From contig NC_079169.1 in the NCBI RefSeq assembly GCF_947568905.1, positions 31,000,001 through 31,064,000 on the forward strand: DNA of 64,000 nucleotides, read 5' to 3'. Under the pieces are notes generated by a model that saw only the letters and a list, made by a program, of their open reading frames with translations, was not told the DNA's origin and did not search any database. The translations under genes were made by a program, and so were the position numbers. Shown one piece after another: positions 11,501 through 43,649 of the stretch; the stretch's first letter is position 1; each line of letters begins with the position of its first letter. Origin of the DNA: Ostrea edulis (taxonomy: Eukaryota).

Positions 11501-13452
11501 TGACACTTACAGTACTTGATGATGAGGTTGTGTAGTTACTTACAGTACTTGATGATGAGGTTGTGTTGTTACTTACAGTACTTGATGATGAGGTTGTGTT
11601 GTTACTTACAGTACTTGATGATGAGGTTGTGTTGTTACTTACACTACTTGATGATGAGGTTGTATTGTTACTTACAGTACTTGATGATGAGGTTGTGTTG
11701 ACACTTACAGTACTTGATGATGAGGTTGTGTTGACACTTACACTACTTGATGATGAGGTTGTGTTGTCACTTACAGTACTTGATGATGAGGTTGTGTTGT
11801 TACTTACACTACTTGATGATGAGGTTGTGTAGTTACTTACAGTACTTGATGATGAGGTTGTGTTGTTACTTACACTACTTGATGATGAGGTTGTGTTGTT
11901 ACTTACAGTACTTGATGATGAGGTTGTGTAGCTACTTACACTACTTGATGATGAGGTTGTGTTGTTACTTACAGTACTTGATGATGAGGTTGTGTTGTTA
12001 CTTACACTACTTGATGATGAAGTTGTGTTGACACTTACAGTACTTGATGATGAGGTTGTGTTGACACTTAAAGTACTTGATGATGAGGTTGTGTTGACAC
12101 TTACACTACTTGATGATGAGGTTGTGTTGACACTTACACTACTTGATGATGAGGTTGTGTTGACACTTACACTACTTGATGATGAGGTTGTGTTGACACT
12201 TACAGTACTTGATGATGAGGTTGTGTTGTTACTTACAGTACTTGATGATGAGGTTGTGTTGTTACTTACAGTACTTGATGATGAGGTTGTGTTGTGAGTT
12301 AGAGTACTTGATGATGAGGTTGTGTTGTTACTTACAGTACTTGATGATGAGGTTGTGTTGACACTTACAGTACTTGATGATGAGGTTGTGTTGTGAGTTA
12401 GAGTACTTGATGATGAGATTGTGTTGTTACTTACAGTACTTGATGACGAGGTTGTGTTGACACTTACACTACTTGATGATGAGGTTGTGTAGTTACTTAC
12501 AGTACTTGATGATGAGGTTGTGTTGTTACTTACAGTACTTGATGATGAGGTTGTGTTGTTACTTACAGTACTTGATGATGAGGTTGTGTTGACACTTACA
12601 CTACTTGATGATGAGGTTGTGTTGTTACTTACAGTACTTGATGATGAGGTGTGTTGACACTTACAGTACTTGATGATGAGGTTGTGTTGGCAGGAGCATC
12701 CTCTAAACACTCAGTAGCGTTATCGGAAGACGATCCATCGTCTGTGGAGTTCACCATGGCAACCAAGGCTACGCTCAGGTTCACACGTAAACAATACACA
12801 TTAAAAAATCCCAGGAATGCCCAGAAAGCCAAAACATGTCGCTTTCCAAAACCTGCAACATTATCATAGTTTTTACATAATACACAACTAGGTAATTTCT
12901 ACCTTCCAGGTTTTCAATTAAGCAAAACAATTAAAATATTCTGTCCGATGTAAACATAATAAACTCTTAATTCACTCTTTAAATCTTAATGAGCCATTGA
13001 AAATTACCATATTAGTATTGTTTAAGGTGGCTCATAACAATAAGACTTATACAGTAACACTATCACAGCTCAGAGGATTGGGTTACCAACTCCCAGACCC
13101 CGAGTTCAAATCACCCAGTCTTTTGTTCATATTTATTGACATAAATTTTTAGAATTACTATTTCTTCTGAAATTGCAAATATTTTTTGTTGTAGTTGTTT
13201 TCTACCTCGTTGACATATGTACTTATTACATATCATCTTTAAAAAATAAATCATATTGTGCAGATTTTGGAAACTCTTTCAAGGCGTAGTTAACCACCTT
13301 AAATGCAATCTCAGAGATATATGTAAGAATCATGTAATGTTCACTGGTATGAACTTGCCTGAGGGTGCAGATGTAGTTTTCCCCAGCAGTGGTTCACTCT
13401 CTGCTGGCTTTGGTTTAAGGTAATCCAGGGTATCTTCAGTACTAGAATCCAT
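2578..13452 (-). CDS. SLC17A5: Sialin-like SLC17 anion/sugar transporter (MFS), 5' part; exons 13452-13359, 12852-12665, 3021-2791, 2665-2578; remaining exons lie left of the window
   Basis: Spliced reading: [31 protein letters not shown]|[35 protein letters not shown]...ANTTSSSST|[32 protein letters not shown]...LRVIEGIGE|[30 protein letters not shown]. These are hallmark SLC17 motifs. Intron phases (1,0,0,1) are consistent. Intron 1 has a GC donor (G|GCAAGT). Exact paralog is uncertain. Confidence 0.9.
3748..12689 (-). repeat. 33-bp minisatellite, ~270 copies, with higher-order block structure; unit on minus strand AACACAACCTCATCATCAAGT(A/T)(C/G)T|GTAAGT(AAC/GTC)
   Basis: Directly visible. 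Plus-strand unit is gttgtgttg(tt/ac)acttaca(g/c)tacttgatgatgag; 8942 bp / 33 = ~271. It begins inside SLC17 exon 2. Confidence 0.99.
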
Positions 13453-13457
13453 CGTAG

Positions 13458-13585
13458 CCCCCTAATATCTCTCCTCTCTAGAGGATAAAACAGCTGTGCC
13501 CCCTAAAATCTCTCCTCTCTAGAGGATAAAACAGCTGTGCTCCCTAAAATCTCTCCTCTACAGGATAAAACAGCTGTGCCCCCTC
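13458..13585. repeat. 3 x ~41-bp tandem repeat just upstream of the SLC17 ATG
   Basis: Unit ccccctaaaatctctcctctctagaggataaaacagctgtg; cagctgtg recurs at 13491, 13532 and 13571. Confidence 0.9.
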
Positions 13586-14168
13586 ACTACTTACAATTTC
13601 TTTTGGCTTCCATTATCAGTAACAAGTGCACTGTATAGAACTGACAGTGTATCAGTGTCACGAGAGCACGGTGGACAAGTCCCCCTTTTTGACAAGATGT
13701 AGACCAACATCATTTAATATCAGGGTGTTATCAAATGAGCAAACATTGTGTTGTGTTGTTGTTATCATCATGCATCAGCTGATTGTGGCTTACTGTAATC
13801 TTACCTTATTATACAAGAGAGTGAATAAAGCAAGAGAGACAACTCTTACACCATTTCCAGTACAATGCAGTAAACAAAGCAGAAAAATGCTTTGTCATTT
13901 TAAAGACATAAATGAATTTGGAACACTACAATTCTAGTTTCTAAAAATTGGTGAGAAGGGAAACTCTTTCACATCACTAATCTCAAATGATAAAAAATGA
14001 GTATATCTAATTTATTAAATAATCAAGCAAATTTTTCATTCATCAACTTTAACATAAAAGATACAAAAAAGTTCTTGTAAATGTTTCCACTAATAGATGA
14101 TATAGCATAGAATGTACAGTACAATGAGTTGCTAATTTTACATTTAACACTGTTACTACACATCACAG

Positions 14169-17100
14169 TCAATTCAAAATGTCTTTTACAATCATAGTAA
14201 CTGAACTATCAAGTGGTTTAGACAAAAGTAAACTTTTCCATTCTTTTATGTCTCTCTGGATCTCTGAATCTTCCTCTAAAATCAATGTAAAAAAATCAAT
14301 TAAAAAATAATATGGGAGTTTTTCCATGATGAAAATAAATCATAACTACACAAAATAAATTCCATGGAAATATAATATAGGAAAGTTTTTGAAGGTTTTT
14401 AATTTGTTAATATTATTTCAATGTTCAACATAAATGTAAAGACTTTAAGTAAAAGCACAGGAGCAAAATTCATGAGAGATCAAGTTAAGATACAGTGTAT
14501 CATAACGATACCAAAGACGGTGGTGATCAGTGTCCTAACAAGCCCCCCCCCCCCCAATCAGTACCTATGATTCAAACTGATTGGACAGGAAGAAGCTCTG
14601 CCTCCTTACCTGAACAGCAACTTCCTGGAAGTGGTAGTTTTATACAGTAAAAGGTCTACTTTCCTGGTGTATCAAAATTTATTGTTATTTAAACAATTAA
14701 AGGAAAACATACAGGACCAGGATGCAATAAAGCCTGAACAAACTACTTCATAAATTTTATGATGTATTTTGAGTAGAGTCCCACTGTCCTGAATGATTTA
14801 GAAATATACTTGTACAGCGCTTTGTGGAGTGTTGCCTCTCGTGTAACGGAAACATAGAAGAACATGCTAATGACCTACCTATCTGAACTCTGTCTGGCAG
14901 TACATTCATTAATCCGAACACCAGTTTAAGTCTGTAAAGCTGTCTGGAATTCTCCAACTTGATTTCGGTATAATCGTAACTTGAGGTGTTCTGTACATCA
15001 CACGACAAACCACTCTTCTTAATAAATTTCTACAGAAAGACAAAATGGCCATACACTTATACCCATACATATGTAAAATTAATTAAACTGCTCAAAGGAA
15101 TATGTATTGTGGCATATTAAAGCCCTTTCTCTAACAGTTCTAGCCATGGTGTGAGAGACAGAAAGACAAAGCTCCTATGCTTTGCAGGTGTCAGTCAGAA
15201 AAACACTACGTTTTTTTTTTAATGCTTTATTTCATTTTCTGTGCATATTTAACTACATTAACAAAAGAGCCGAACTGATTGAATGATGTAAACATTTATT
15301 TTACAGGGATTAAAATTAACAGCCACCTACTCATCCAATCTGGCAGTCCTGTTTTTCTGTTTTGTAATGTTTATTGTCTTACACAAATGAATTTACGAAC
15401 AAAGCTTATAACTGCGACATTTGTTGTGGTAACACTGGCTGTTAAGATTAGCCTGACTGCAGGTCTAATGCTATCGTATGAAACTTCGTCCATGCCTATG
15501 TGAGAAATATTTATGAACATGGTTAATATCTATCTAACAACACACGTCTTCTTCACATGTTACACTCACCAATGTTGGGACCAGTTGTAAATATTTTTCC
15601 AAACTCAAAAAAATTAAAATGACCTATTTCAATTAATATTAAAAAATATATCAATCATAGAATTGAGTCAAAATAAGTGATAGATAATTTACACAACTCA
15701 ATCATTATACCAATTATATAGTCATTACATTTGTCTAACCTTACAAAACTCCTTAGTTGAAATTTCAAAATTGAAGATTTACTGGTGGTTAGGATTAATG
15801 ATAATTCACTTAACTGAGATCAATGTGAGTATAGCTGATAATAATATCATAGTGAAAGTGTGAGTAGTCACAGATTTCTGACAACATTATCATTGAGAAA
15901 TTAAATAATCAGGCCTATAATGTGTCAATATAAAAACCAAGTTTTGCACCTCAAAAAAAGTTCACTTACCATGTATATTTCAAAAGTTTAAATATTACAA
16001 TTTGGGACTCAACAATAATGAGGGGATGTACAGCAGCGTTGTGATTCCTGAATTAGTGCTCTGACATGGCCACATGCTAAGTTTTGTTTAACAGTCTTCT
16101 AAAGACAAATTTCATCTAGTAAGGATGCTTTGTGCCAAGTTTACTTCCCTATGCATTCGCAAGTAACACTTTGATCCCCTATTGTGGCCCCACCCTAATT
16201 CCAGGGGTCATGAGTTTTGCAAACTTGAATCTCCACTTTGTTAGGATTGATTGATTGATGTTTTCCGCCACACTCAACAATTTTTCAGTTATCTGGTGGC
16301 ACTCAGTTTTTATTGGTAGAAGGGAGAACCCAGATACAATGTACCTGGGATGAGACCACTGACCTTCTGAAAGTAAACTGGGAAACTTTCTCACTTACTG
16401 GCGCGAGCGGGATTCGAACCTGCGTCGACAGAGGTGAGAGGCCATGTGATTTTGAGCGTGATGGCTCTAGCCACTCACTATGTCAGGAAGCTTTCATGTA
16501 AATTTCAGCTTTTCTGGCCTAGTGGTCCTTGAAAAGAAGATTTTTAAACAGGGATCGACACTAACGGTTGTCCGATTGCTCGAGGCAAGTGAAAACCCAG
16601 TTCGGACAAGTGAAACTCAATACACACTTGCCCAATGGGGCAAGTGATTATTTTAGTAGGAAATGTCATTATCATAATAATTGTGTTAAGCTTGGATGAT
16701 TATCAAATATTAGAAAGTAAATTCCAACTCCGTATTACTCAATCATCAGTTTATTTTTAATACTACAACTACTACTAGTGAAGATCGTAACATATCTTAT
16801 CCTATCAGTAAGTCGTTCCAAATAACATAAACTATCAGACATACCACTTATCTTAGTCACATTTGTGAGAAAATGGCAGCTTCACAACTGTCTCTCAAAG
16901 TATTTTAGTGAGGTAAACGCTCAGAGAGAAGATGATAAGAGAAAAGGCAATGTTAGAAAATAAAAATAAATCCAAATTAAAAAGAAAACGTGAGATTTAG
17001 GCGGCATGACAATCCCAATTTTGAGGTTTAATCAACACCCCGGCACTGAGCAGTATGATATGTGTCATGTGTCAGAAATTCATGCAGCGCAACACCTGCT

Positions 17101-36024: not shown

Positions 36025-37572
36025 CTCTGTATTGACTGTAAGATACATATACTTTATGTCATGTATTGATTAATTATTGATACTTGGAGTTAGAACAGAT
36101 ATTGATACTGGGGAGAACCGCGGGTCCAGATCCCTGCCCCTTCAGATTGGTATACCGGAATTAGCACACGATACGCCTGTCACAGGCTGTTCAATCGAGA
36201 AAAATGTTGACCACAACTTGCAGCTACCCACAAAACCTCCAGCTCTTTTAAATGGATACACACAACCAAAACAAAGATACAAAACAAAAACAAACCCACA
36301 CATTATCTTAGATATAAAGGCTGTAACTTAATGAAAACTGAATGGCATCATTACCATAATAATACACCCTATGTAAGATTGGTGTATAAAAATATTGCAC
36401 ATGCATTTTGATTTTATATATATATATATATATATAATTATTATTATTATATTATTCAGTATAGATAAGATAAGTTTATTCCAATTTTGGGCCCAGAGGG
36501 TATAACAGTAAGACAGTTTATACAGAAGGAAACTCAAAAAAGAAAGAAAGTTTATATATATATATATATGTCACGCTGTATACATGTATATATATATATA
36601 TATAAACAAGCTATAAAACGTCATAACATGAAAACTGCAAAGACAGATGGACAGACAGACAAATGAATGATTGCAACGTGATTTAGATCGACTAAAGAAG
36701 ATTCAGCTTAATATATGGCAGACAAATGAAAATAAAAACAGACATGTGTGTGTGTGTGTGTGTGTGCAAATTTGCCTATATTACGGAGTTTACGTTTTAA
36801 GTTTGGACTTCTTAAAAATGACATGGGCGGAATCCCCCGTCTGTGGAAAATTTGTAAAGCCGCGCAGACAGAGGATGCAAAATTTAGATGATGGCCAAGC
36901 CCGTTTTGACCCGAAACTCATATTGTTACAATGAGTTTCGGTTCAAAACGGGCTTAGACCCTGTGGTTCTACTTAGTATATCCATGTACAGCATGCTAAA
37001 ATGTTGGGAGAACTAGCGTCAAATATTTTAAAAGATACCATCAAATGCTTAAAATAGCGTCTAACTTACAACTCCCCTATTCAGTTAAAAAAAAACCCAC
37101 CGATCTGTCTGTGCATGTGTGCAACTATTCCCCTCAAGACAACATATTCCATAGCTGATTTGGGGGATCAAAATTAAGCTGCTTGATATCGTATTTGTTA
37201 ATTTCACGACAAATATTACATACATTCGCATTGTCTAGATATATATACAGGTTAGGCTTCAAAAGAGACTATAAATAGCCATGACTGATGTCTTTAGATC
37301 GCTATACAAACCGTGAATATCTTGTAAAAATCACAAATTTATCCACACAGTCTGATAATTTCCAACATCAGTTGCATATACGTCAAGACAGACACTGATA
37401 GCATACTTGATTTTAACGATCCGGCGCACCTGGGTTAATCGGCGATGACCAGCGACACACTTGATTGTGAGCCGGAATAGTTTACGCCAGCACCGTTTCC
37501 GGTTTTAAATATTAGTCACGGTTTATGGGGGATACTGAAAACGCTTTATCAATTAGACGCTTGAAGTAAACA

Positions 37573-39636
37573 ATGGTGAAATATTGTTGTGTTCCACTTT
37601 GTGGTGGTTTTGGGGGTCACAAGTTTCCCACAGATCAGGAATTACTCTTGAAATGGAGGGTAGCGATCAAACGGATGGATAGGAAAACAAAAAAATTATG
37701 GAACCCAGGAAAAGAAGACGTTGTTTGCCATATACACTTCACAGAAGATGACTACAAAATCACCGAATCAGGTTAGATCGAGGTCCTATCAATCAGTTAT
37801 ATAAAGCTGCATCGTCAATTGATTTGTTGAATTGTTTTAATTTTTCCTTCTTTCAAATATTGATTTATAAAGTTTCCTCATTTTGTCTTGTATTCGTGTA
37901 TTGATAACGTTCTTTTTTACATTCTTGAATGCGTTGCTTTGTGGTTTGTTTTTACTCTTTTCAGGTGCAACTACTGACATGTGGTATGTATCACAGTATT
38001 CATTTAATATAATACTAGGCTATATGACGAGACATATACTGCTTTGATAAAACGTTACAGGATTAAAGAGTGCTATGATACCATATATGTATATATATAC
38101 ACACATATAACCAGCTGAGTCCTGGTCTCCACACAATGTAATTAAAATTAGATCTTCCATCCGCTCCCCAAACTGGGGAGCGGATGGAAGATCTAATTTT
38201 AATTAGATTGGGTCTCCACATTAACAATCACCATTTTCTGGTGTTATTTTCATATATTTGGTGATTCCCCCCCCCCCCTAATATTTTTTACAGTAGAAGT
38301 GACTGCTAAAAATGCAAGGTTGAATTTGCTACATGACTATTTATGTAAATCAATTATAACAAATCTAGTTTATAATTAGCGAATCTTAAAGCTTTTAAAT
38401 ATAAAGTATAACTTACAACCAACATTCCTGTAACATATTCAATTTGTGACAGGTGAACGAAGACGACTTAAGTATGGAGCTGCGCCCTCTGTTTTTGACT
38501 TCAAGAATACCAGTACTACCCAGGAATCTGACAGAGCTAAGCGAAAGAGGCTGCGAGAGTCTACTCAAGATACATGTACTCCAATGATTGAAGACCTGCC
38601 CATATATATGGATGAATTGATTGTACATCATGAAGTTGTTGTAGATCAGTCATCTACAAGTATTTCCACATCCATGCCAGAAGAAATGTGTTCAACAGCT
38701 GAGAAAGAAATCCAGTGTGACATACCTACCTTAGGTAGATTTTCAATTGAAGGTATGAAACTGGACACTAAGATGCTTTCTTATTACACTGGTTTGAATG
38801 GCTATGATCATTTCATGCTTCTCTTTAATATTCTTGGGCCAGCAGCTTTTGACTTGAATTACAAATGTGGCTTATTAAGTCCACAAGATCAGTTGTTTTT
38901 AACTCTGATGAAACTCAGACAAGCAAAAGAAGATGTGGAACTTGCTATGCTCTTTAAAGTCTGTGAATCTACTGTTTCTAAAATTGTAACAACTTGGATT
39001 AACTTTTTGTATTTTCAATTAAAAGAGTTAGAGGAACAATTCTGGCCTTCTAAAGACATCATTAAAGAACATATGCCAACAGATTTTGCTAAAAAGTTTC
39101 CCAATACACGCGTAATTTTAGATGCAACCGAGCAACCAATTCACAAACCATCAAATGTTGAGGCACAATCCAAAACATGGTCTTCTTATAAACACAAAAA
39201 CACGTTGAAAACCATGGTAGGTGTAACTCCAAATGGAGCAGTATCATATGTATCCTCTACTTATGGGGGCTCTGTGTCTGACAGACAAATCATTGAACAC
39301 TCTACTCTGCTAGATGTAGGCAAATTTGATGCTGGTGACAGCATTATGGCAGATCGGGGAATTCTTGTTCAAGATTTATTTGCGAATCAGAATGTTTTTA
39401 TTAATACACCTACGTTTGTCAAGGGCAAAATCCAACTTGACCCCGAAGAAATAGTTAGAGATAGGCGAGTTGCCTCAAAACGTATTCATGTAGAGAGGGT
39501 GATTGGGCTTGCAAAGAGGTTCAAAATTTTGAAACATGAGCTACCAATGTCAAAAATCCCCCTAGCTTCCAGAATTGTGTACATTTGTTTTATGTTGTCA
39601 AATTTTAGGAATTGCATTGTTGATAAAAGTGCTTAA
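37573..39636 (+). CDS. THAP-HTH-DDE (DDE_Tnp_4/HARBI1-like) transposase, ~460 aa; exons 37573-37771 and 38453-39636
   Basis: THAP: MVKYCCVPLC...FP...W...P....VCHIHF, ending GAAPSVF after a phase-1 splice. HTH: QLFLTLMKLR...LAMLFKVCESTVSKI. Catalytic triad: ILDATE, MADRG, RIHVERVIG. Confidence 0.92.
38134..38210. mobile_element. 77-bp fold-back mini-element with 10-bp TSD GGTCTCCACA
   Basis: caatgtaattaaaattagatcttccatccgctcccca-aac-tggggagcggatggaagatctaattttaattagattg; TSD at 38124-33 and 38211-20. Confidence 0.9.
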
Positions 39637-40184
39637 ACATGTGCCAGTAGTATATCAAAATGTACATGCATACATGTCTAAGTTTAATAAATGTATGCCC
39701 TGCACATACAGTGAATCCCTTGAGAGTTGTGTTCATATTTCTGCTTACAAGTTTTAAATGTATCGTACATTTTTTGTATCCTTTATGCAACATGTGCTGT
39801 CAATATTCAAAGGGATACATCATACAAGGATCTTGGTAGACATATCAACTTTTAAGTGTAAAAGCTATTTACCTTGAAAGGGTCAAAGTACAATATCTTT
39901 TTAAAAAAATCAATTTAAAAAGTTTAACACTTTATATAACCAACATCTATGCATTGTTACATGTATATTGTCAATACAGAAAATTTCATATCATGGATAT
40001 GCAATGTATTTCATCTGAAATTGATTGGCATTCTGGGCAGAAACTTAGGCAAAAAAACATGAAGAATCATTTGCAGACTCTAATCAAATCATGAATACAA
40101 AAAAGATTCTGTATAAAAAAATGAACTGTCTCGATAAATCATTTAGAAGAAACTTTTACACAAGTTTGCATATATGCTTCCACT

Positions 40185-43100
40185 TTACAGCAAGGATAAC
40201 AAGTATGGCATGAAAAATTTATCATAGAATACATCAAGCTTTGGAAGAAGAGAATTCTGGCAACATTCTACATCAATATGTACTTTCTGGATGAACAAAT
40301 CTTTGAAAGTGTATACAACAAAATAGCAAATTTGTTTTTTGGCAATAAGCATTTGGCCTTGTATTTGGAAAAAATATTTAGAGGTGGGTTTCAATTTCAT
40401 TTCACCAGTTACAGAGTCCATTGTTAGATATGGGAAGTACTTTCCAGGCTGAATCTTCTCAAAGCGACCAGCAAAGGGACATTTGACTTCAATTAGTGCA
40501 TCATTGCCAACGAGTCCATCCGGTGATGCCCCCAAGTAAGGTCGATCCATATCAACAAAGAAACCACATCTTTGAACACCTTGGCCAGTCTCTCTTTCAA
40601 AGGATCTGTAATGAGAGATAAAAATAGGAAAAGGCATATAATATATGTAAATAATAATTTACTGATTTGACCAATGCTTATATAGAGCGTTAAGATTTAC
40701 AAACCAGGTCTCTGCTGTACACGTGATTGTCTGACTAGCTCACACTAAAACATACCTAATAGCACGTGTCTCATAGGTACGTCCATGGACTAGAGCTTCA
40801 CTGCGAAATACAGCAGCAGAAGGCTGGTATAGAGACTCGCAGAGTTTCTGCCTATTACGTTTGTCTGTAGCTAAACAGATATCTCCAAATCTTGAGGCTG
40901 TGATCCGCCATGATCTCTCCTTGAACCAATTATTTGAGCTGGCTTGTCCACGTGTCTGCTCCTCAATGGCAACTACTTTATCTGCTGTAACCTTTAAGAA
41001 ATTGTATATAACAAAAACCATATATCTTGTACTGTGTTTTGTAGTATAAAATTGCATGGTATTAGTAATACATATGAACATGAGAAAAAATCCTTGCAAT
41101 CAATTTACATTGCACATTATATCTTATTTTAACACATATACAACATTTGCACAAATGTCATAAAATTTAATTTTGTTGAAATGCAGTTTGAGCCAATTAA
41201 CAAAAGACCTACCTCAACAGCTCGTTGAACCCAATACTCTGTGAAGGGTCTTTCCAAATAATCATGGTCCAATACTGCTGCCTAGTGAAACAAAAGGTGT
41301 TACAGTTTGTTTGTTATTAAACACTTTATTTTATATGTGCAGTTTTACCCTTCACTACTTACTGCTTTAGATTAACAGACTTATAATTTTAAAATCAACA
41401 TTTTATATGCATTACTAATATAGCTTGCTATAAGTTCACTAGCGAGATACTTTTGACTTGACGCTGCTTATAATTAGCGATGTACAGGGACATTAAGTGA
41501 GATTCTTGCTTGTGTGAGTAATGCATTTTCATGCTTATGTTTACCTGAATAAATGCTTTCTCGATGAGATATCTGTATGTCAGATTGTCTGAGGTCTCTG
41601 CACAATGGTTTAAGACCATATTGCGAACCCTATCCGGGTAACCAGCTACACCTTTTAGATGTTCAGGGCGGGGATCATTTAAAAAATCATCAGTCAGATT
41701 CTGCTTCCTGGGCAGATCTTCAGCTTTGACTGGTGAACCTATATCAAAATTTGAATATGTTAAACATGTGGAAAAAAATAAATTATTGTACTTGATTCAA
41801 TATATGGTCATAAAACTATTGCTTCTGTTCATCATGGAACATCACATAATATTCATGTATTTTTACCTGAGTATGAATGTTTGGGTTTATGAAATGTCTG
41901 CAGGTTTTCTGTGCATGATCTCTGAATCCTCAAACCTTTTCCTTCAGAACAAGAGAGTAAAACTATGGCAACAGCAGCAAGATGTTTGCAAGTTCCATGG
42001 GGACCTCGTCCTGCAGGACACTCACAATGGCTGTTCAAGATGTCTCCCGAGTTTTTGTCAAATTTTAATTTGAAGTTGTATGTTACCTTTAATTTGAAAT
42101 ACATACATGTATTCTGGGTAATATAATTTTTTTTAGTTATTTTTACAAAAATATCTCAGTACAAAGTAATAAAATAAGAGAAAATAACTGATAACATACA
42201 TGGTACATGTACAATTAGTACTACAATGTATATTATATCCACAAATTAAATGTAATACTTGCCTTTGTTTTCATGGCTGCGCCAACAATGCCTGTAAAGA
42301 ACAGGGAATTATCTTCCTTTAAATATGACACAGCCAAGACTCTATCACTTTCAACAAGCAGCCTTCCTTTCTCGATAGCCTTGACATCACCAGTGCTTTG
42401 TCTGTCACCTACACATAAGTACAAGCTCATGATTTTAAAATTTATTTACTCATAAACACATAATTATATATATGTACAAATTATTCTATAAGATATTGCA
42501 CATTCATTAAATGACTCCTAATGTTAGATGTATGTTTTACAAAAATGTTGTTCTTAATCATACAAGTAAATTATATGAACAAACCTGCTAATCTATGTAC
42601 AAAATACATGTCTATCTGCTCAATGCATATCTCTGGGATTTCTTCTTTATGTGATTCCTGGAGCTGTTGAAATCCCCTCGTTGGCCAATCAACTTCCAAA
42701 GGCTCAGGTATATGAATTGGGTCATTCTTGAAATCTTTATTTCTATCATATGCCTTAAGCCTACAATAAAGTACTGTACAATGTCCACTTCCCATAAAAA
42801 AAATATTAGGTACCAAGACGTACTAGTACATGTCAGTGAATGCCATTGTATCATGTATTACAATATTAACAACAGTCCGTATAGTACTATAATTATTACG
42901 TATAATTGATGACATAAATATAACTTATATCACATTAATTTATTGAATTTTGATAAAAGAATTGTCGCACTGAGCATCAAAACAATCTCTAGGCATAATC
43001 ATGCCGGCGTAAACATCCTCCGTCGTCTGCATGGGTGCAGAGCTACGAATTTGTTGAAATATTACAAACGAAAATAACGGCTATGAGGTATGAAACTACA

Positions 43101-43207
43101 AACCTGTCTATAAGGTCGGCTTTTCTGCCTCTCGTGGTGGCTCCTTTTTTCTTTAACTCGTCCTTGAGTCGAGAGACGGAAAACTTTACGTAAGTTTCTC
43201 TTTCCAT
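40185..43207 (-). CDS. SAP-SWIM-YqaJ (lambda-exonuclease-like) protein of ISL2EU, ~521 aa; exons 43207-43104, 42760-42585, 42408-42263, 42086-41867, 41738-41545, 41281-41213, 40991-40756, 40605-40185
   Basis: All eight exons splice in frame (1566 nt; one GC donor). SAP-like VSRLKDELKKKGATTRGRKADLIDRL; SWIM CECPAGRGPHGTCKH; YqaJ motifs EEQTRGQ..W.KER..RITASRFG, HG..YE, LGASPDGL, EVKCP and YFFQIQGQM. Confidence 0.88.
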
Positions 43208-43649
43208 TTCAGTGTTTACAAGCGTCTAAGTGAAATAAAGCGTTTTAACGTATCCCCCATAACGACATAATTTTTAGAACCGGTAACGGTCGTCGGCGAA
43301 TACCATTGCGCACGCATCCCGCCGGGTACGCCGATTGAGCCGTAAAATTTTGATATATTCAACCAATAGATTCAAGCTGATGTCATTGGAATTGAATCGA
43401 GCTTAGCCGGGTATACCCGACGACGTGCTAAGAATCAAGTGACCCAGCTACAGTACAGTAATGAAAATATTGACCTTCTATTGCAGATCTGTATAAACAT
43501 TATTCGGCATAGTAATAACCAACATATTTACAAATCATGTTTATTTCACCAGTGTAAAAAACATTATGTCTTTAAAATAAGCAACTCTCGACTACGGTTT
43601 CCATGGACGCCAGCTTGAAGCCGCCTTTGTCTATCATGGAGTCATGATG

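What the first reader, a model, noticed from the sequence alone, without database searches (positions are those of the whole stretch)
37270..43520. Apparently intact two-gene ISL2EU transposon with an 8-exon SAP-SWIM-YqaJ nuclease partner
Both genes splice into uninterrupted frames with intact catalytic motifs (DDE; PD-(D/E)xK as SPDG...EVKCP), unlike every other element in the window, so it may be recently active or domesticated. The transposase + YqaJ pairing is known for ISL2EU. The role of the exonuclease is, to my knowledge, not experimentally established. The N-terminal SAP (DNA tether) and SWIM zinc finger suggest a targeting or end-processing subunit replacing the Myb/SANT partner of Harbingers.
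Basis: partly seen in the sequence, partly recalled or inferred. Interest (0 to 1): 0.7.

Follow-up and report, generated by a model that had tools for sequence, protein, structure and literature searches.

The report
Young intact ISL2EU transposon in oyster
This is an open-reading-frame-intact copy of a young, roughly 25-copy "cut-and-paste" ISL2EU transposon of the flat oyster, a known kind of element that carries a transposase gene and a lambda-exonuclease-like gene whose role is still untested, so it is largely ordinary.

Summary
Seven other Ostrea edulis copies (99.0-99.8% identical) and empty-site reads place the element at 37479-43304 (5,826 bp). It sits in an AATT target with an AT duplication, the ISL2EU hallmark.

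The + strand encodes a THAP/HTH/DDE transposase of 460 aa, if a 19-nt cassette exon is skipped. The - strand encodes an 8-exon, 521-aa SAP-SWIM-YqaJ nuclease. Both frames are open in the window copy. The DDE triad and the lambda-exonuclease D..ExK triad are intact.

Splicing support: spliced contigs from a related organism show five nuclease introns exactly and one acceptor. The model gives 521 and 493 aa in two copies, matching NCBI's product lengths there. An intronless homologue is collinear with it.

The family is mobile, not domesticated. Read depth suggests about 25 copies, on at least 6 chromosomes. Activity today is not shown.

The transposase + YqaJ pairing is published; the nuclease's role is not. 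SAP-SWIM-YqaJ is conserved in mussel and brachiopod elements.

Two untested leads: a possible splicing switch at the cassette exon, and the same nuclease clade fused to Mutator-like transposases.

The scan found this family before on other DNA of this genome (s1-287409).

The parts
37476..37478 (.). Left half of the target: A, then the AT target-site duplication (37477-37478)
   Evidence: All the copies whose ends are intact begin AAT and end ATT, next to unrelated flanks. Reads join 37476 directly to 43305, giving an empty ..CCGGAATTGCGC.. site.
37479..37572 (+). Left terminal inverted repeat (about 94 bp, imperfect). It runs up to the transposase ATG, so it must also hold the 5' UTR and probably the promoter.
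   Evidence: 76 of 94/97 positions match the reverse complement of 43208-43304. Homology among copies starts here.
37573..37771 (+). Transposase exon 1: the C2CH zinc part of the THAP domain
   Evidence: Pfam THAP E 6e-10, profile positions 1-63 of 87. The GT donor follows at 37772.
37965..37983 (+). 19-nt cassette exon. If included, the THAP frame stops after 73 aa and THAP is separated from the catalytic part.
   Evidence: Strong acceptor and donor, identical in all 8 copies. The N-terminus of the NCBI product P0001 is encoded across this exon. A 19-nt counterpart with the same splice signals exists in Saccostrea.
38134..38210 (.). 77-bp fold-back insertion in the transposase intron, flanked by a 10-bp duplication GGTCTCCACA (38124-38133 and 38211-38220). 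It is a passenger, not part of the ISL2EU machinery.
   Evidence: Inverted repeat I5, 95% complementary. Read depth is very high and there are many loose ends here. It is present in all 8 copies.
38453..39636 (+). Main transposase exon: the AVPTIF-like end of THAP, HTH_Tnp_4 and the DDE_Tnp_4 catalytic domain, with the stop at 39634-39636. DDE residues are D at 39121-39123, D at 39352-39354 and E at 39493-39495.
   Evidence: Pfam matches. The three residues are invariant in 20 homologues. The frame is open in all 8 copies.
43208..43304 (-). Right terminal inverted repeat (about 97 bp); it runs up to the nuclease ATG
43305..43307 (.). Right copy of the AT duplication (43305-43306), then the T of the AATT target
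43104..43207 (-). Nuclease exon 1: SAP domain
   Evidence: Pfam SAP E 1e-9. A spliced contig joins 43103 to 42759, +/-1.
42585..42760 (-). Nuclease exon 2: conserved N-terminal region with no Pfam family
   Evidence: Spliced contig in X19. Homologous exon in Saccostrea and Lingula.
42263..42408 (-). Nuclease exon 3: beta-strand lead-in to the SWIM domain. The donor is GC, in all copies.
41867..42086 (-). Nuclease exon 4: SWIM zinc finger, CxC..CxH at 42026-41982
   Evidence: Pfam SWIM 21.4 bits, cut-off 19.6. The motif is conserved in Saccostrea, Mytilus and Lingula and nearly invariant in 25 representatives.
41545..41738 (-). Nuclease exon 5: linker, with the conserved DPRP..RN motif
   Evidence: The acceptor at 41738 is seen in X19. 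The donor was chosen by frame and by the 521-aa total. Exons 5 and 6 are contiguous in Lingula.
41213..41281 (-). Nuclease exon 6 (23 codons)
40756..40991 (-). Nuclease exon 7: N-terminal half of the YqaJ / lambda-exonuclease domain
   Evidence: Both flanking junctions are seen in spliced contig X19 record 11. Weak Viral_alk_exo match.
40185..40605 (-). Nuclease exon 8: catalytic half of the YqaJ domain, with the stop at 40185-40187. Catalytic residues are D at 40520-40518, E at 40490-40488 and K at 40484-40482.
   Evidence: Pfam YqaJ E 8.5e-9. It aligns to LHK-Exo 3SYY and lambda exonuclease 1AVQ across SPDG..E.KCP.

Best explanation
Window 37479-43304 is one ORF-intact copy of a young, multi-copy ISL2EU (PHIS superfamily) cut-and-paste DNA transposon of Ostrea edulis.

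Shown. The element is 5,826 bp long with imperfect terminal inverted repeats of about 95 bp. It is inserted in an AATT target with an AT duplication, inside another repeat. Its two genes converge, and each starts right at the inner edge of a terminal repeat. One encodes a THAP-HTH-DDE transposase. The other encodes an 8-exon, 521-aa SAP-SWIM-YqaJ protein with an intact lambda-exonuclease catalytic triad.

Inferred mechanism. The THAP/HTH part of the transposase binds the terminal repeats. The DDE domain excises the element and re-inserts it at AATT with a 2-bp stagger. The partner protein is a 5'-3' exonuclease held on DNA or on the transposase by its SAP and SWIM domains. It most likely resects DNA ends that the transposase makes, either the donor-site break or the excised ends. 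That would channel repair towards homology-directed copying, which would restore the element at the donor site. This last step is my preferred guess, at about 0.3.

A 19-nt cassette exon may decide whether a complete THAP-DDE transposase is made.
For: Domains.

Limits, duplication and target: seven paralogous copies on at least 6 chromosomes, and 27 raw DNA reads plus contigs joining 37476 to 43305.

Youth and copy number: copies are 99.0-99.8% identical. Read depth is about 35-40 at about 1.4x genome coverage, so about 25 copies. At least 17 annotated loci fall in one 90% protein cluster.

Intact frames: 460 aa and 521 aa in the window copy. The transposase frame is open in 8 of 8 copies and the nuclease frame in 5 of 8. 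My exon model gives 521 aa and 493 aa in L005 and L002, matching NCBI's product lengths there.

Splicing: spliced contigs of run X19 show five nuclease introns exactly, one acceptor, and the transposase intron. The intronless homologue P0138 is collinear with the exons that match it (E2-E5, E7, E8).

Catalytic residues.

Fold: a model of the 48%-identical relative P0138 matches LHK-Exo and lambda exonuclease (TM 0.73 and 0.62) and weakly ZSWIM8.

Family features as published: AT duplication, A|AT|T target, THAP/HTH/DDE plus a YqaJ ORF (PMC4482050).

Selection: 15 of 37 coding variants among copies are synonymous, against 21% expected (P about 0.007, ignoring transition bias).
Against: There is no direct evidence that this copy, or the family, moves today. 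The empty sites seen in reads are paralogous copies of the host repeat, not proven alleles of this locus.

No O. edulis RNA run could be laid. The spliced contigs come from another organism's decayed copies.

NCBI's O. edulis transposase models include the cassette exon, so they lack a THAP fusion. The active 460-aa form is therefore inferred from Saccostrea P0002.

The window copy has a private Ser-to-Ile change at a fairly conserved position, KGK[S]QL.

Fixed differences between the two sub-groups are as frequent in coding as in non-coding DNA, so the selection signal is weak.

The left end starts AG, not the usual GG.

The nuclease's role is pure inference.
Confidence: 0.85

Rival explanations
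1. The pair is a domesticated host locus: a fixed, single-copy transposase-derived gene with a nuclease partner, kept for a cellular function.
For: Both frames are open and both catalytic sites intact. NCBI annotates the copies as ordinary genes with isoforms.
Against: At least 8 copies at 99% identity sit in unrelated flanks on several chromosomes. The terminal repeats and AT duplication are intact, empty versions of the target exist, and there are about 25 copies by depth.
Confidence: 0.02
2. The family is young but now silent. This copy is a molecular fossil whose frames are open only because too little time has passed, and the cassette exon or host silencing prevents any full-length transposase from being made.
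For: NCBI's O. edulis models all carry the 19-nt exon that breaks the THAP fusion. 3 of 8 copies already have a broken nuclease gene. Coding and non-coding DNA differ equally between the sub-groups. No RNA run of this species was found holding the element.
Against: There is an excess of synonymous changes. All 8 transposase frames are open. Divergence of 0.2-1% implies recent bursts from two sub-lineages.
Confidence: 0.3
3. The nuclease is a core catalytic partner of transposition rather than a repair helper. It would cut or trim the second strand, or process 5' ends of the excised element, so that the DDE enzyme can integrate it.
For: The pairing is conserved across phyla with the same convergent layout. 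The same nuclease clade is fused directly to Mutator-like transposases, as expected for a part that works within a transposition complex. SWIM could mediate protein contact.
Against: The related Spy and PIF/Harbinger groups carry no nuclease gene alongside similar DDE enzymes (PMC4122938, PMC4482050). Lambda-type exonucleases are processive resection enzymes, not site-specific cutters.
Confidence: 0.25

Closest known systems
ISL2EU group of the PHIS (PIF/Harbinger-ISL2EU-Spy) superfamily, e.g. the Repbase ISL2EU families of Crassostrea gigas and fishes (Han et al. 2015, PMC4482050; Han et al. 2014, PMC4122938)
   Same: THAP + HTH + DDE transposase, a second gene with a YqaJ exonuclease domain, a 2-bp AT duplication in an A|AT|T target, terminal inverted repeats within the 6-259 bp range, an animal host, and a size near the ~4.8 kb average.
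   Different: This is a new family-level member from Ostrea edulis, not described in any paper I could search. The left end starts AG rather than GG. The published descriptions I read name only the YqaJ domain. Here SAP and SWIM are shown to be conserved parts of the partner protein.
Lambda exonuclease / LHK-Exo / phage YqaJ (PDB 1AVQ, 3SYY)
   Same: The SPDG..E.KCP catalytic triad has the same spacing, the Y..Q.QGQ motif is present, and a close relative shares the fold.
   Different: It is eukaryotic, split into exons, and carries about 270 extra N-terminal residues (SAP, SWIM, linker). No annealing-protein partner such as Red-beta or YqaK is encoded. Trimer formation and activity are untested.
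PIF/Harbinger two-gene transposons (e.g. Harbinger3_DR with its Myb/SANT partner)
   Same: Related DDE_Tnp_4 transposase, and a two-gene design in which the second protein is presumably needed for transposition.
   Different: The partner is a nuclease, not a Myb-like DNA-binding protein. The duplication is 2 bp (AT) rather than 3 bp (TWA). DNA binding is built into the transposase as THAP.
Drosophila P element (THAP transposase regulated by tissue-specific splicing)
   Same: It has a THAP-domain transposase. Here too an alternative splice choice would decide between a full-length enzyme and a truncated product.
   Different: The catalytic domain is unrelated (RNase-H-like P/THAP9 type against DDE_Tnp_4). 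The switch here would be a 19-nt cassette exon rather than a retained intron, and it is only inferred.

Membership tests
ISL2EU transposons | DDE_Tnp_4-type transposase with a complete DDE triad | tested here: met
   Pfam DDE_Tnp_4 matched over 1-158 of 158 positions, E 5e-42. D226, D303 and E350 are invariant in 20 homologues.
ISL2EU transposons | N-terminal THAP and HTH DNA-binding domains on the transposase | tested here: met
   THAP E 6e-10 and HTH_Tnp_4 E 1e-13. The THAP fusion requires skipping the 19-nt exon; the fused form is annotated in Saccostrea P0002.
ISL2EU transposons | Second gene encoding a YqaJ-domain protein | tested here: met
   YqaJ scores 36.3 bits (cut-off 22) on the last exon alone. 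The same partner lies next to the transposase in Saccostrea, Mytilus and Lingula.
ISL2EU transposons | 2-bp AT target-site duplication in an A|AT|T target | tested here: met
   The copies with intact ends are flanked AAT...ATT. Empty-site reads read ..GGAATTGC...
ISL2EU transposons | Terminal inverted repeats, usually starting GG | tested here: inconclusive
   Imperfect repeats of about 95 bp are present. The right end starts GG and the left end AG.
ISL2EU transposons | Transposase falls in the ISL2EU clade, apart from PIF/Harbinger and Spy | not testable with these tools
   No Repbase reference transposases were available. Membership rests on the architecture and the duplication.
Lambda-exonuclease / YqaJ PD-(D/E)XK nucleases | Catalytic Asp, Glu and Lys in the D-x9-E-x-K arrangement | tested here: met
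   SPDG..IEVKCP aligns to D119/E129/K131 of lambda exonuclease and to LHK-Exo. The residues are invariant in 25 relatives.
Lambda-exonuclease / YqaJ PD-(D/E)XK nucleases | Lambda-exonuclease fold | tested here: met
   Tested on a 48%-identical intronless relative, P0138, not on the window protein. pLDDT is above 90 in the domain. Foldseek gives 3SYY at E 8e-10 with TM 0.73, and lambda exonuclease at TM 0.62.
Lambda-exonuclease / YqaJ PD-(D/E)XK nucleases | Processive 5'-3' dsDNA exonuclease activity and a toroidal trimer | not testable with these tools
   Needs biochemistry or a multimer model of the joined protein.
SWIM zinc fingers | CxCxnCxH signature and a Pfam match above the cut-off | tested here: met
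   HCECPAGRGPHGTCKH; 21.4 bits against 19.6. Conserved in four species.
Domesticated transposase genes (HARBI1-like) | Single-copy, no terminal repeats or duplication, syntenic between species | tested here: not met
   About 25 copies with intact ends and duplications.

The most novel reading that the evidence does not exclude
Two features not described in the papers I could search may be real biology.

(a) A 19-nt cassette exon, conserved in length and splice signals between Ostrea and Saccostrea, acts as a P-element-like splicing switch. Included, it uncouples the THAP zinc finger from the DDE domain (off state). Skipped, it yields the full transposase (on state).

(b) The SAP-SWIM-YqaJ protein belongs to a portable end-resection module that different transposon superfamilies have recruited. 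ISL2EU carries it as a separate gene; Mutator-like elements carry it as a C-terminal fusion. Its function would be to steer repair of transposase-made breaks.
Probability: 0.25. Interest if true: 0.6.

Novelty: new member of a known kind. Interest (0 to 1): 0.3.

Why it matters
On its own this is one more family of a catalogued transposon group.

Its value is practical. The family is very young, both genes are open in several copies, and the exact ends, target and exon structure are now defined. That makes it a good starting point for the first functional test of what the ISL2EU nuclease does, a question the literature leaves open (PMC4482050).

The conserved SAP-SWIM front end, the cassette exon and the Mutator-YqaJ fusions give concrete hypotheses for such a test.

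Tried and rejected
Rejected. Homology among copies starts at 37476 and ends at 43307.
- **My first guess for the ends.** I took the perfectly repeated GGGGGATAC 13-mer with AT beside it (37525 and 43260) as the ends. Rejected, because the inverted repeat and the copy homology continue about 50 bp further out.
- **Other copies in the window.** None found by DNA.
- **Empty-site polymorphism at this locus.** Not resolvable. The flank is itself a repeat with dozens of variants, so the 37476-to-43305 joints are paralogous empty sites.
- **O. edulis RNA evidence.** No run on record as RNA holds the element. X4 and X11 behaved as DNA. X19, from another organism, gave spliced contigs from decayed copies. 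These carry 20-nt and 13-nt deletions, an odd exon-4 junction, and a transposase junction 4 nt short of the canonical site. I used X19 only for intron positions.
- **The window locus's own gene calls.** P0134 is identical to the window over the 393 residues of the main transposase exon, but it is not on record as a longest product.
- **PDB sequence search with the transposase.** No hit.
- **Bacterial promoter scan.** Irrelevant for an animal.
- **SWIM homology between ISL2EU partners and the Mutator-YqaJ fusions.** Only the YqaJ part is shared.
- **Joined spliced proteins of the window copy.** Exons were searched singly by reference, and a stored intronless relative was folded instead.
Full report
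**What is there.**
- On the + strand: a THAP finger (37573-37776, E 6e-10), then HTH_Tnp_4 and a full-length DDE_Tnp_4 domain (38446-39636, E 5e-42).
- On the - strand: SAP (43043-43207, E 1e-9), SWIM (41853-42104, 21.4 bits against a cut-off of 19.6) and YqaJ (40185-40637, E 8.5e-9).

The two genes converge, and their 5' ends face the element's ends. The organism is the flat oyster Ostrea edulis: the best protein hit is an O. edulis RefSeq product at 98% identity.

**True limits and target.**
The word search with the main transposase exon found a 90% cluster of 27 O. edulis products from at least 17 annotated loci. I fetched seven of these loci, from at least 6 chromosomes.
- Each aligns to the window from 37476 to 43307 or 43308 and no further. 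One copy is truncated at 42468 and one has a rearranged left end.
- At the ends the copies begin AAT-AGTTTACGCC and end GGCGAATACC-ATT, next to unrelated flanks.
- Raw DNA reads of run X21 (27 reads from 25 start points), and contigs of two other runs, join 37476 directly to 43305. They read ..CCGGAATTGCGC...

So the element proper is 37479-43304 (5,826 bp). It is inserted in AATT with an AT duplication. This is exactly the ISL2EU signature published by Han et al. 2015: AT duplication, A|AT|T target (PMC4482050).

The extra sequence belongs to another repeat, which is abundant in the reads in its uninterrupted form. The empty sites are therefore paralogous, not proven alleles of this locus.

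The terminal inverted repeats are about 94 and 97 bp long and about 80% alike. They reach the ATG of each gene. Any promoter and 5' UTR must therefore lie inside them.

**Gene models.**
*Transposase.* Exon 1 (37573-37771) joins 38453-39636 in frame and gives 460 aa. The THAP domain is completed by an AAPSVF box at the start of the second exon. This matches the annotated 463-aa Saccostrea cucullata protein P0002.

*Nuclease.* The eight exons are 43207-43104, 42760-42585, 42408-42263 (GC donor), 42086-41867, 41738-41545, 41281-41213, 40991-40756 and 40605-40188, plus the stop. Together they encode 521 aa. Support for this model:
- Contigs of run X19, a different organism, carry the spliced forms of five of the seven introns at these positions, plus the acceptor of a sixth. 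These contigs come from copies with small deletions.
- Applied to the other copies, the model gives 521 aa in L005 and 493 aa in L002. These are the NCBI product lengths at those loci.
- Every exon except the first has an in-order counterpart in Saccostrea, Mytilus and Lingula elements. The intronless 482-aa homologue P0138 matches exons 2-5, 7 and 8 in order.
- Exons 5 and 6 are contiguous in Lingula, which fixes the one junction not seen in RNA.

**Intactness.**
- The 460-aa transposase frame is open in all eight copies.
- The 521-aa nuclease frame is open in five copies, including the window. L002 has a 1-nt deletion in exon 8, L004 has a stop at codon 241, and L001 lacks the 5' part.
- The DDE residues are invariant in 20 homologues from molluscs, a nemertean, a brachiopod and a tunicate.
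- The nuclease motif SPDG..IEVKCP aligns to D119/E129/K131 of lambda exonuclease and to LHK-Exo, with the same spacing. The residues are invariant in 25 relatives, and the four SWIM ligands are nearly so.
- The window copy has one private change, Ser to Ile in KGK[S]QL. This position is Ser in 14 of 20 homologues.

**Age, copy number, selection.**
- Copies are 99.0-99.8% identical and fall into two sub-groups: the window plus L005, against the rest.
- Read depth on the element is about 35-40 in a sample of about 1.4 Gb from a genome of about 0.95 Gb. That gives roughly 25 copies. It is a rough figure, because no single-copy flank was available for scaling.
- Of 37 coding variants, 15 are synonymous against 21% expected (P about 0.007 without allowing for transition bias). 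This hints that both genes were under selection while the family spread.
- However, fixed differences between the sub-groups are no rarer in coding than in non-coding DNA (17 of 2942 against 16 of 2880). The signal is therefore weak.

**How it most likely works.**
The identification as a mobile ISL2EU element is solid. The domesticated alternative fails on copy number, intact ends and duplications.

Cut-and-paste by the THAP-DDE enzyme at AATT follows from the family's published properties.

The nuclease is the open part. The papers I read say only that its role is unknown (PMC4482050). What I can add:
- A model of the relative P0138 (mean pLDDT 78, above 90 in the nuclease domain) matches LHK-Exo (TM 0.73) and lambda exonuclease (TM 0.62). 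Both are processive 5'-3' resection enzymes. The SWIM part weakly matches ZSWIM8.
- SAP, the SWIM region and the linker motifs are conserved across two phyla.

My preferred reading is a DNA-tethered resection enzyme acting on transposase-made ends, which biases repair towards homology-directed copying. A direct role in strand processing within the transposition complex is nearly as likely. Neither is tested.

**Two leads.**

*First lead: a cassette exon.* The intron between the THAP exon and the main exon holds a 19-nt exon (37965-37983) with a strong acceptor and donor, identical in all copies.
- NCBI's O. edulis products (P0001, starting MTTKSPNQVQLLTCGERRRL) are encoded across it.
- With it included, the THAP frame stops after 73 aa. 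The zinc finger is then separated from its AVPTIF-like box and from the catalytic domain.
- Saccostrea has a 19-nt counterpart. The polypyrimidine tract and both splice sites are the best-conserved part of an otherwise poorly conserved intron, while the exon's interior is not conserved.
- That pattern suits a frame-shifting switch, but no O. edulis RNA could be examined.

*Second lead: Mutator fusions.* The exhaustive search with the last exon found 5,710 relatives at E up to 0.001.
- Besides many SWIM-YqaJ proteins, it found proteins of 546-1155 aa in which the same nuclease clade (36% identity over 200 residues, E 3e-38) is fused behind a Mutator-like transposase. One of these is from the beetle Holotrichia oblita.
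- No paper I could search mentions this.

**Limits of this work.**
- Exons were searched singly by reference. Joined frames were only checked inside scripts.
- The fold was made on a stored relative, not on the window protein.

**Earlier notes of this scan.**
The scan has already met this family on other DNA of the same genome. One note describes a 5,847-letter "young ISL2EU transposon copy" and judged it largely ordinary (s1-287409). I agree with that verdict.

Noticed in passing
window 37965-37983 (and L008 7374-7392): A 19-nt cassette exon lies in the THAP/transposase intron. Inclusion truncates the THAP frame at 73 aa; skipping gives the 460-aa fusion. Its length and splice signals are conserved in Saccostrea, but its interior sequence is not. 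It may be a splicing switch.
   Followed up: partly
proteins P0194, P0203, P0239, P0270, P0281: The same YqaJ nuclease clade is fused to the C-terminus of Mutator-like transposases (Pfam PF20700), for example in the beetle Holotrichia oblita. I found no paper describing this.
   Followed up: partly
window 38124-38220: A 77-bp fold-back insertion (38134-38210) with a 10-bp duplication GGTCTCCACA sits in the transposase intron of all eight copies. Its family is very abundant in the reads. It belongs to the fold-back family noted earlier by the scan.
   Followed up: partly
window about 37400-37476 and 43305-43355: The transposon is inserted in another repeat. Dozens of contig variants of the uninterrupted flank exist, and the copies diverge again near 43355. 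The left limit and the identity of this host repeat were not determined.
   Followed up: no
L002-L004, L006, L007 transposase gene ranges; product P0121 (115 aa): At several copies NCBI's transposase gene range runs about 1.5 kb past the stop, into the nuclease gene on the other strand. A 115-aa isoform uses a donor inside the main exon (..SIE|gtatga). Transcripts of the two genes probably overlap antisense.
   Followed up: no
L006 5729-5760: One copy has a rearranged left end (AGGGGATACAATAGTTTCCG..). It seems to carry part of the internal GGGGGATAC block moved to the tip.
   Followed up: no
L008 about 12336-15121: In the Saccostrea cucullata copy, nuclease exon 2 is split by an insertion of about 2.8 kb, so that copy's partner gene is broken.
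   Followed up: no
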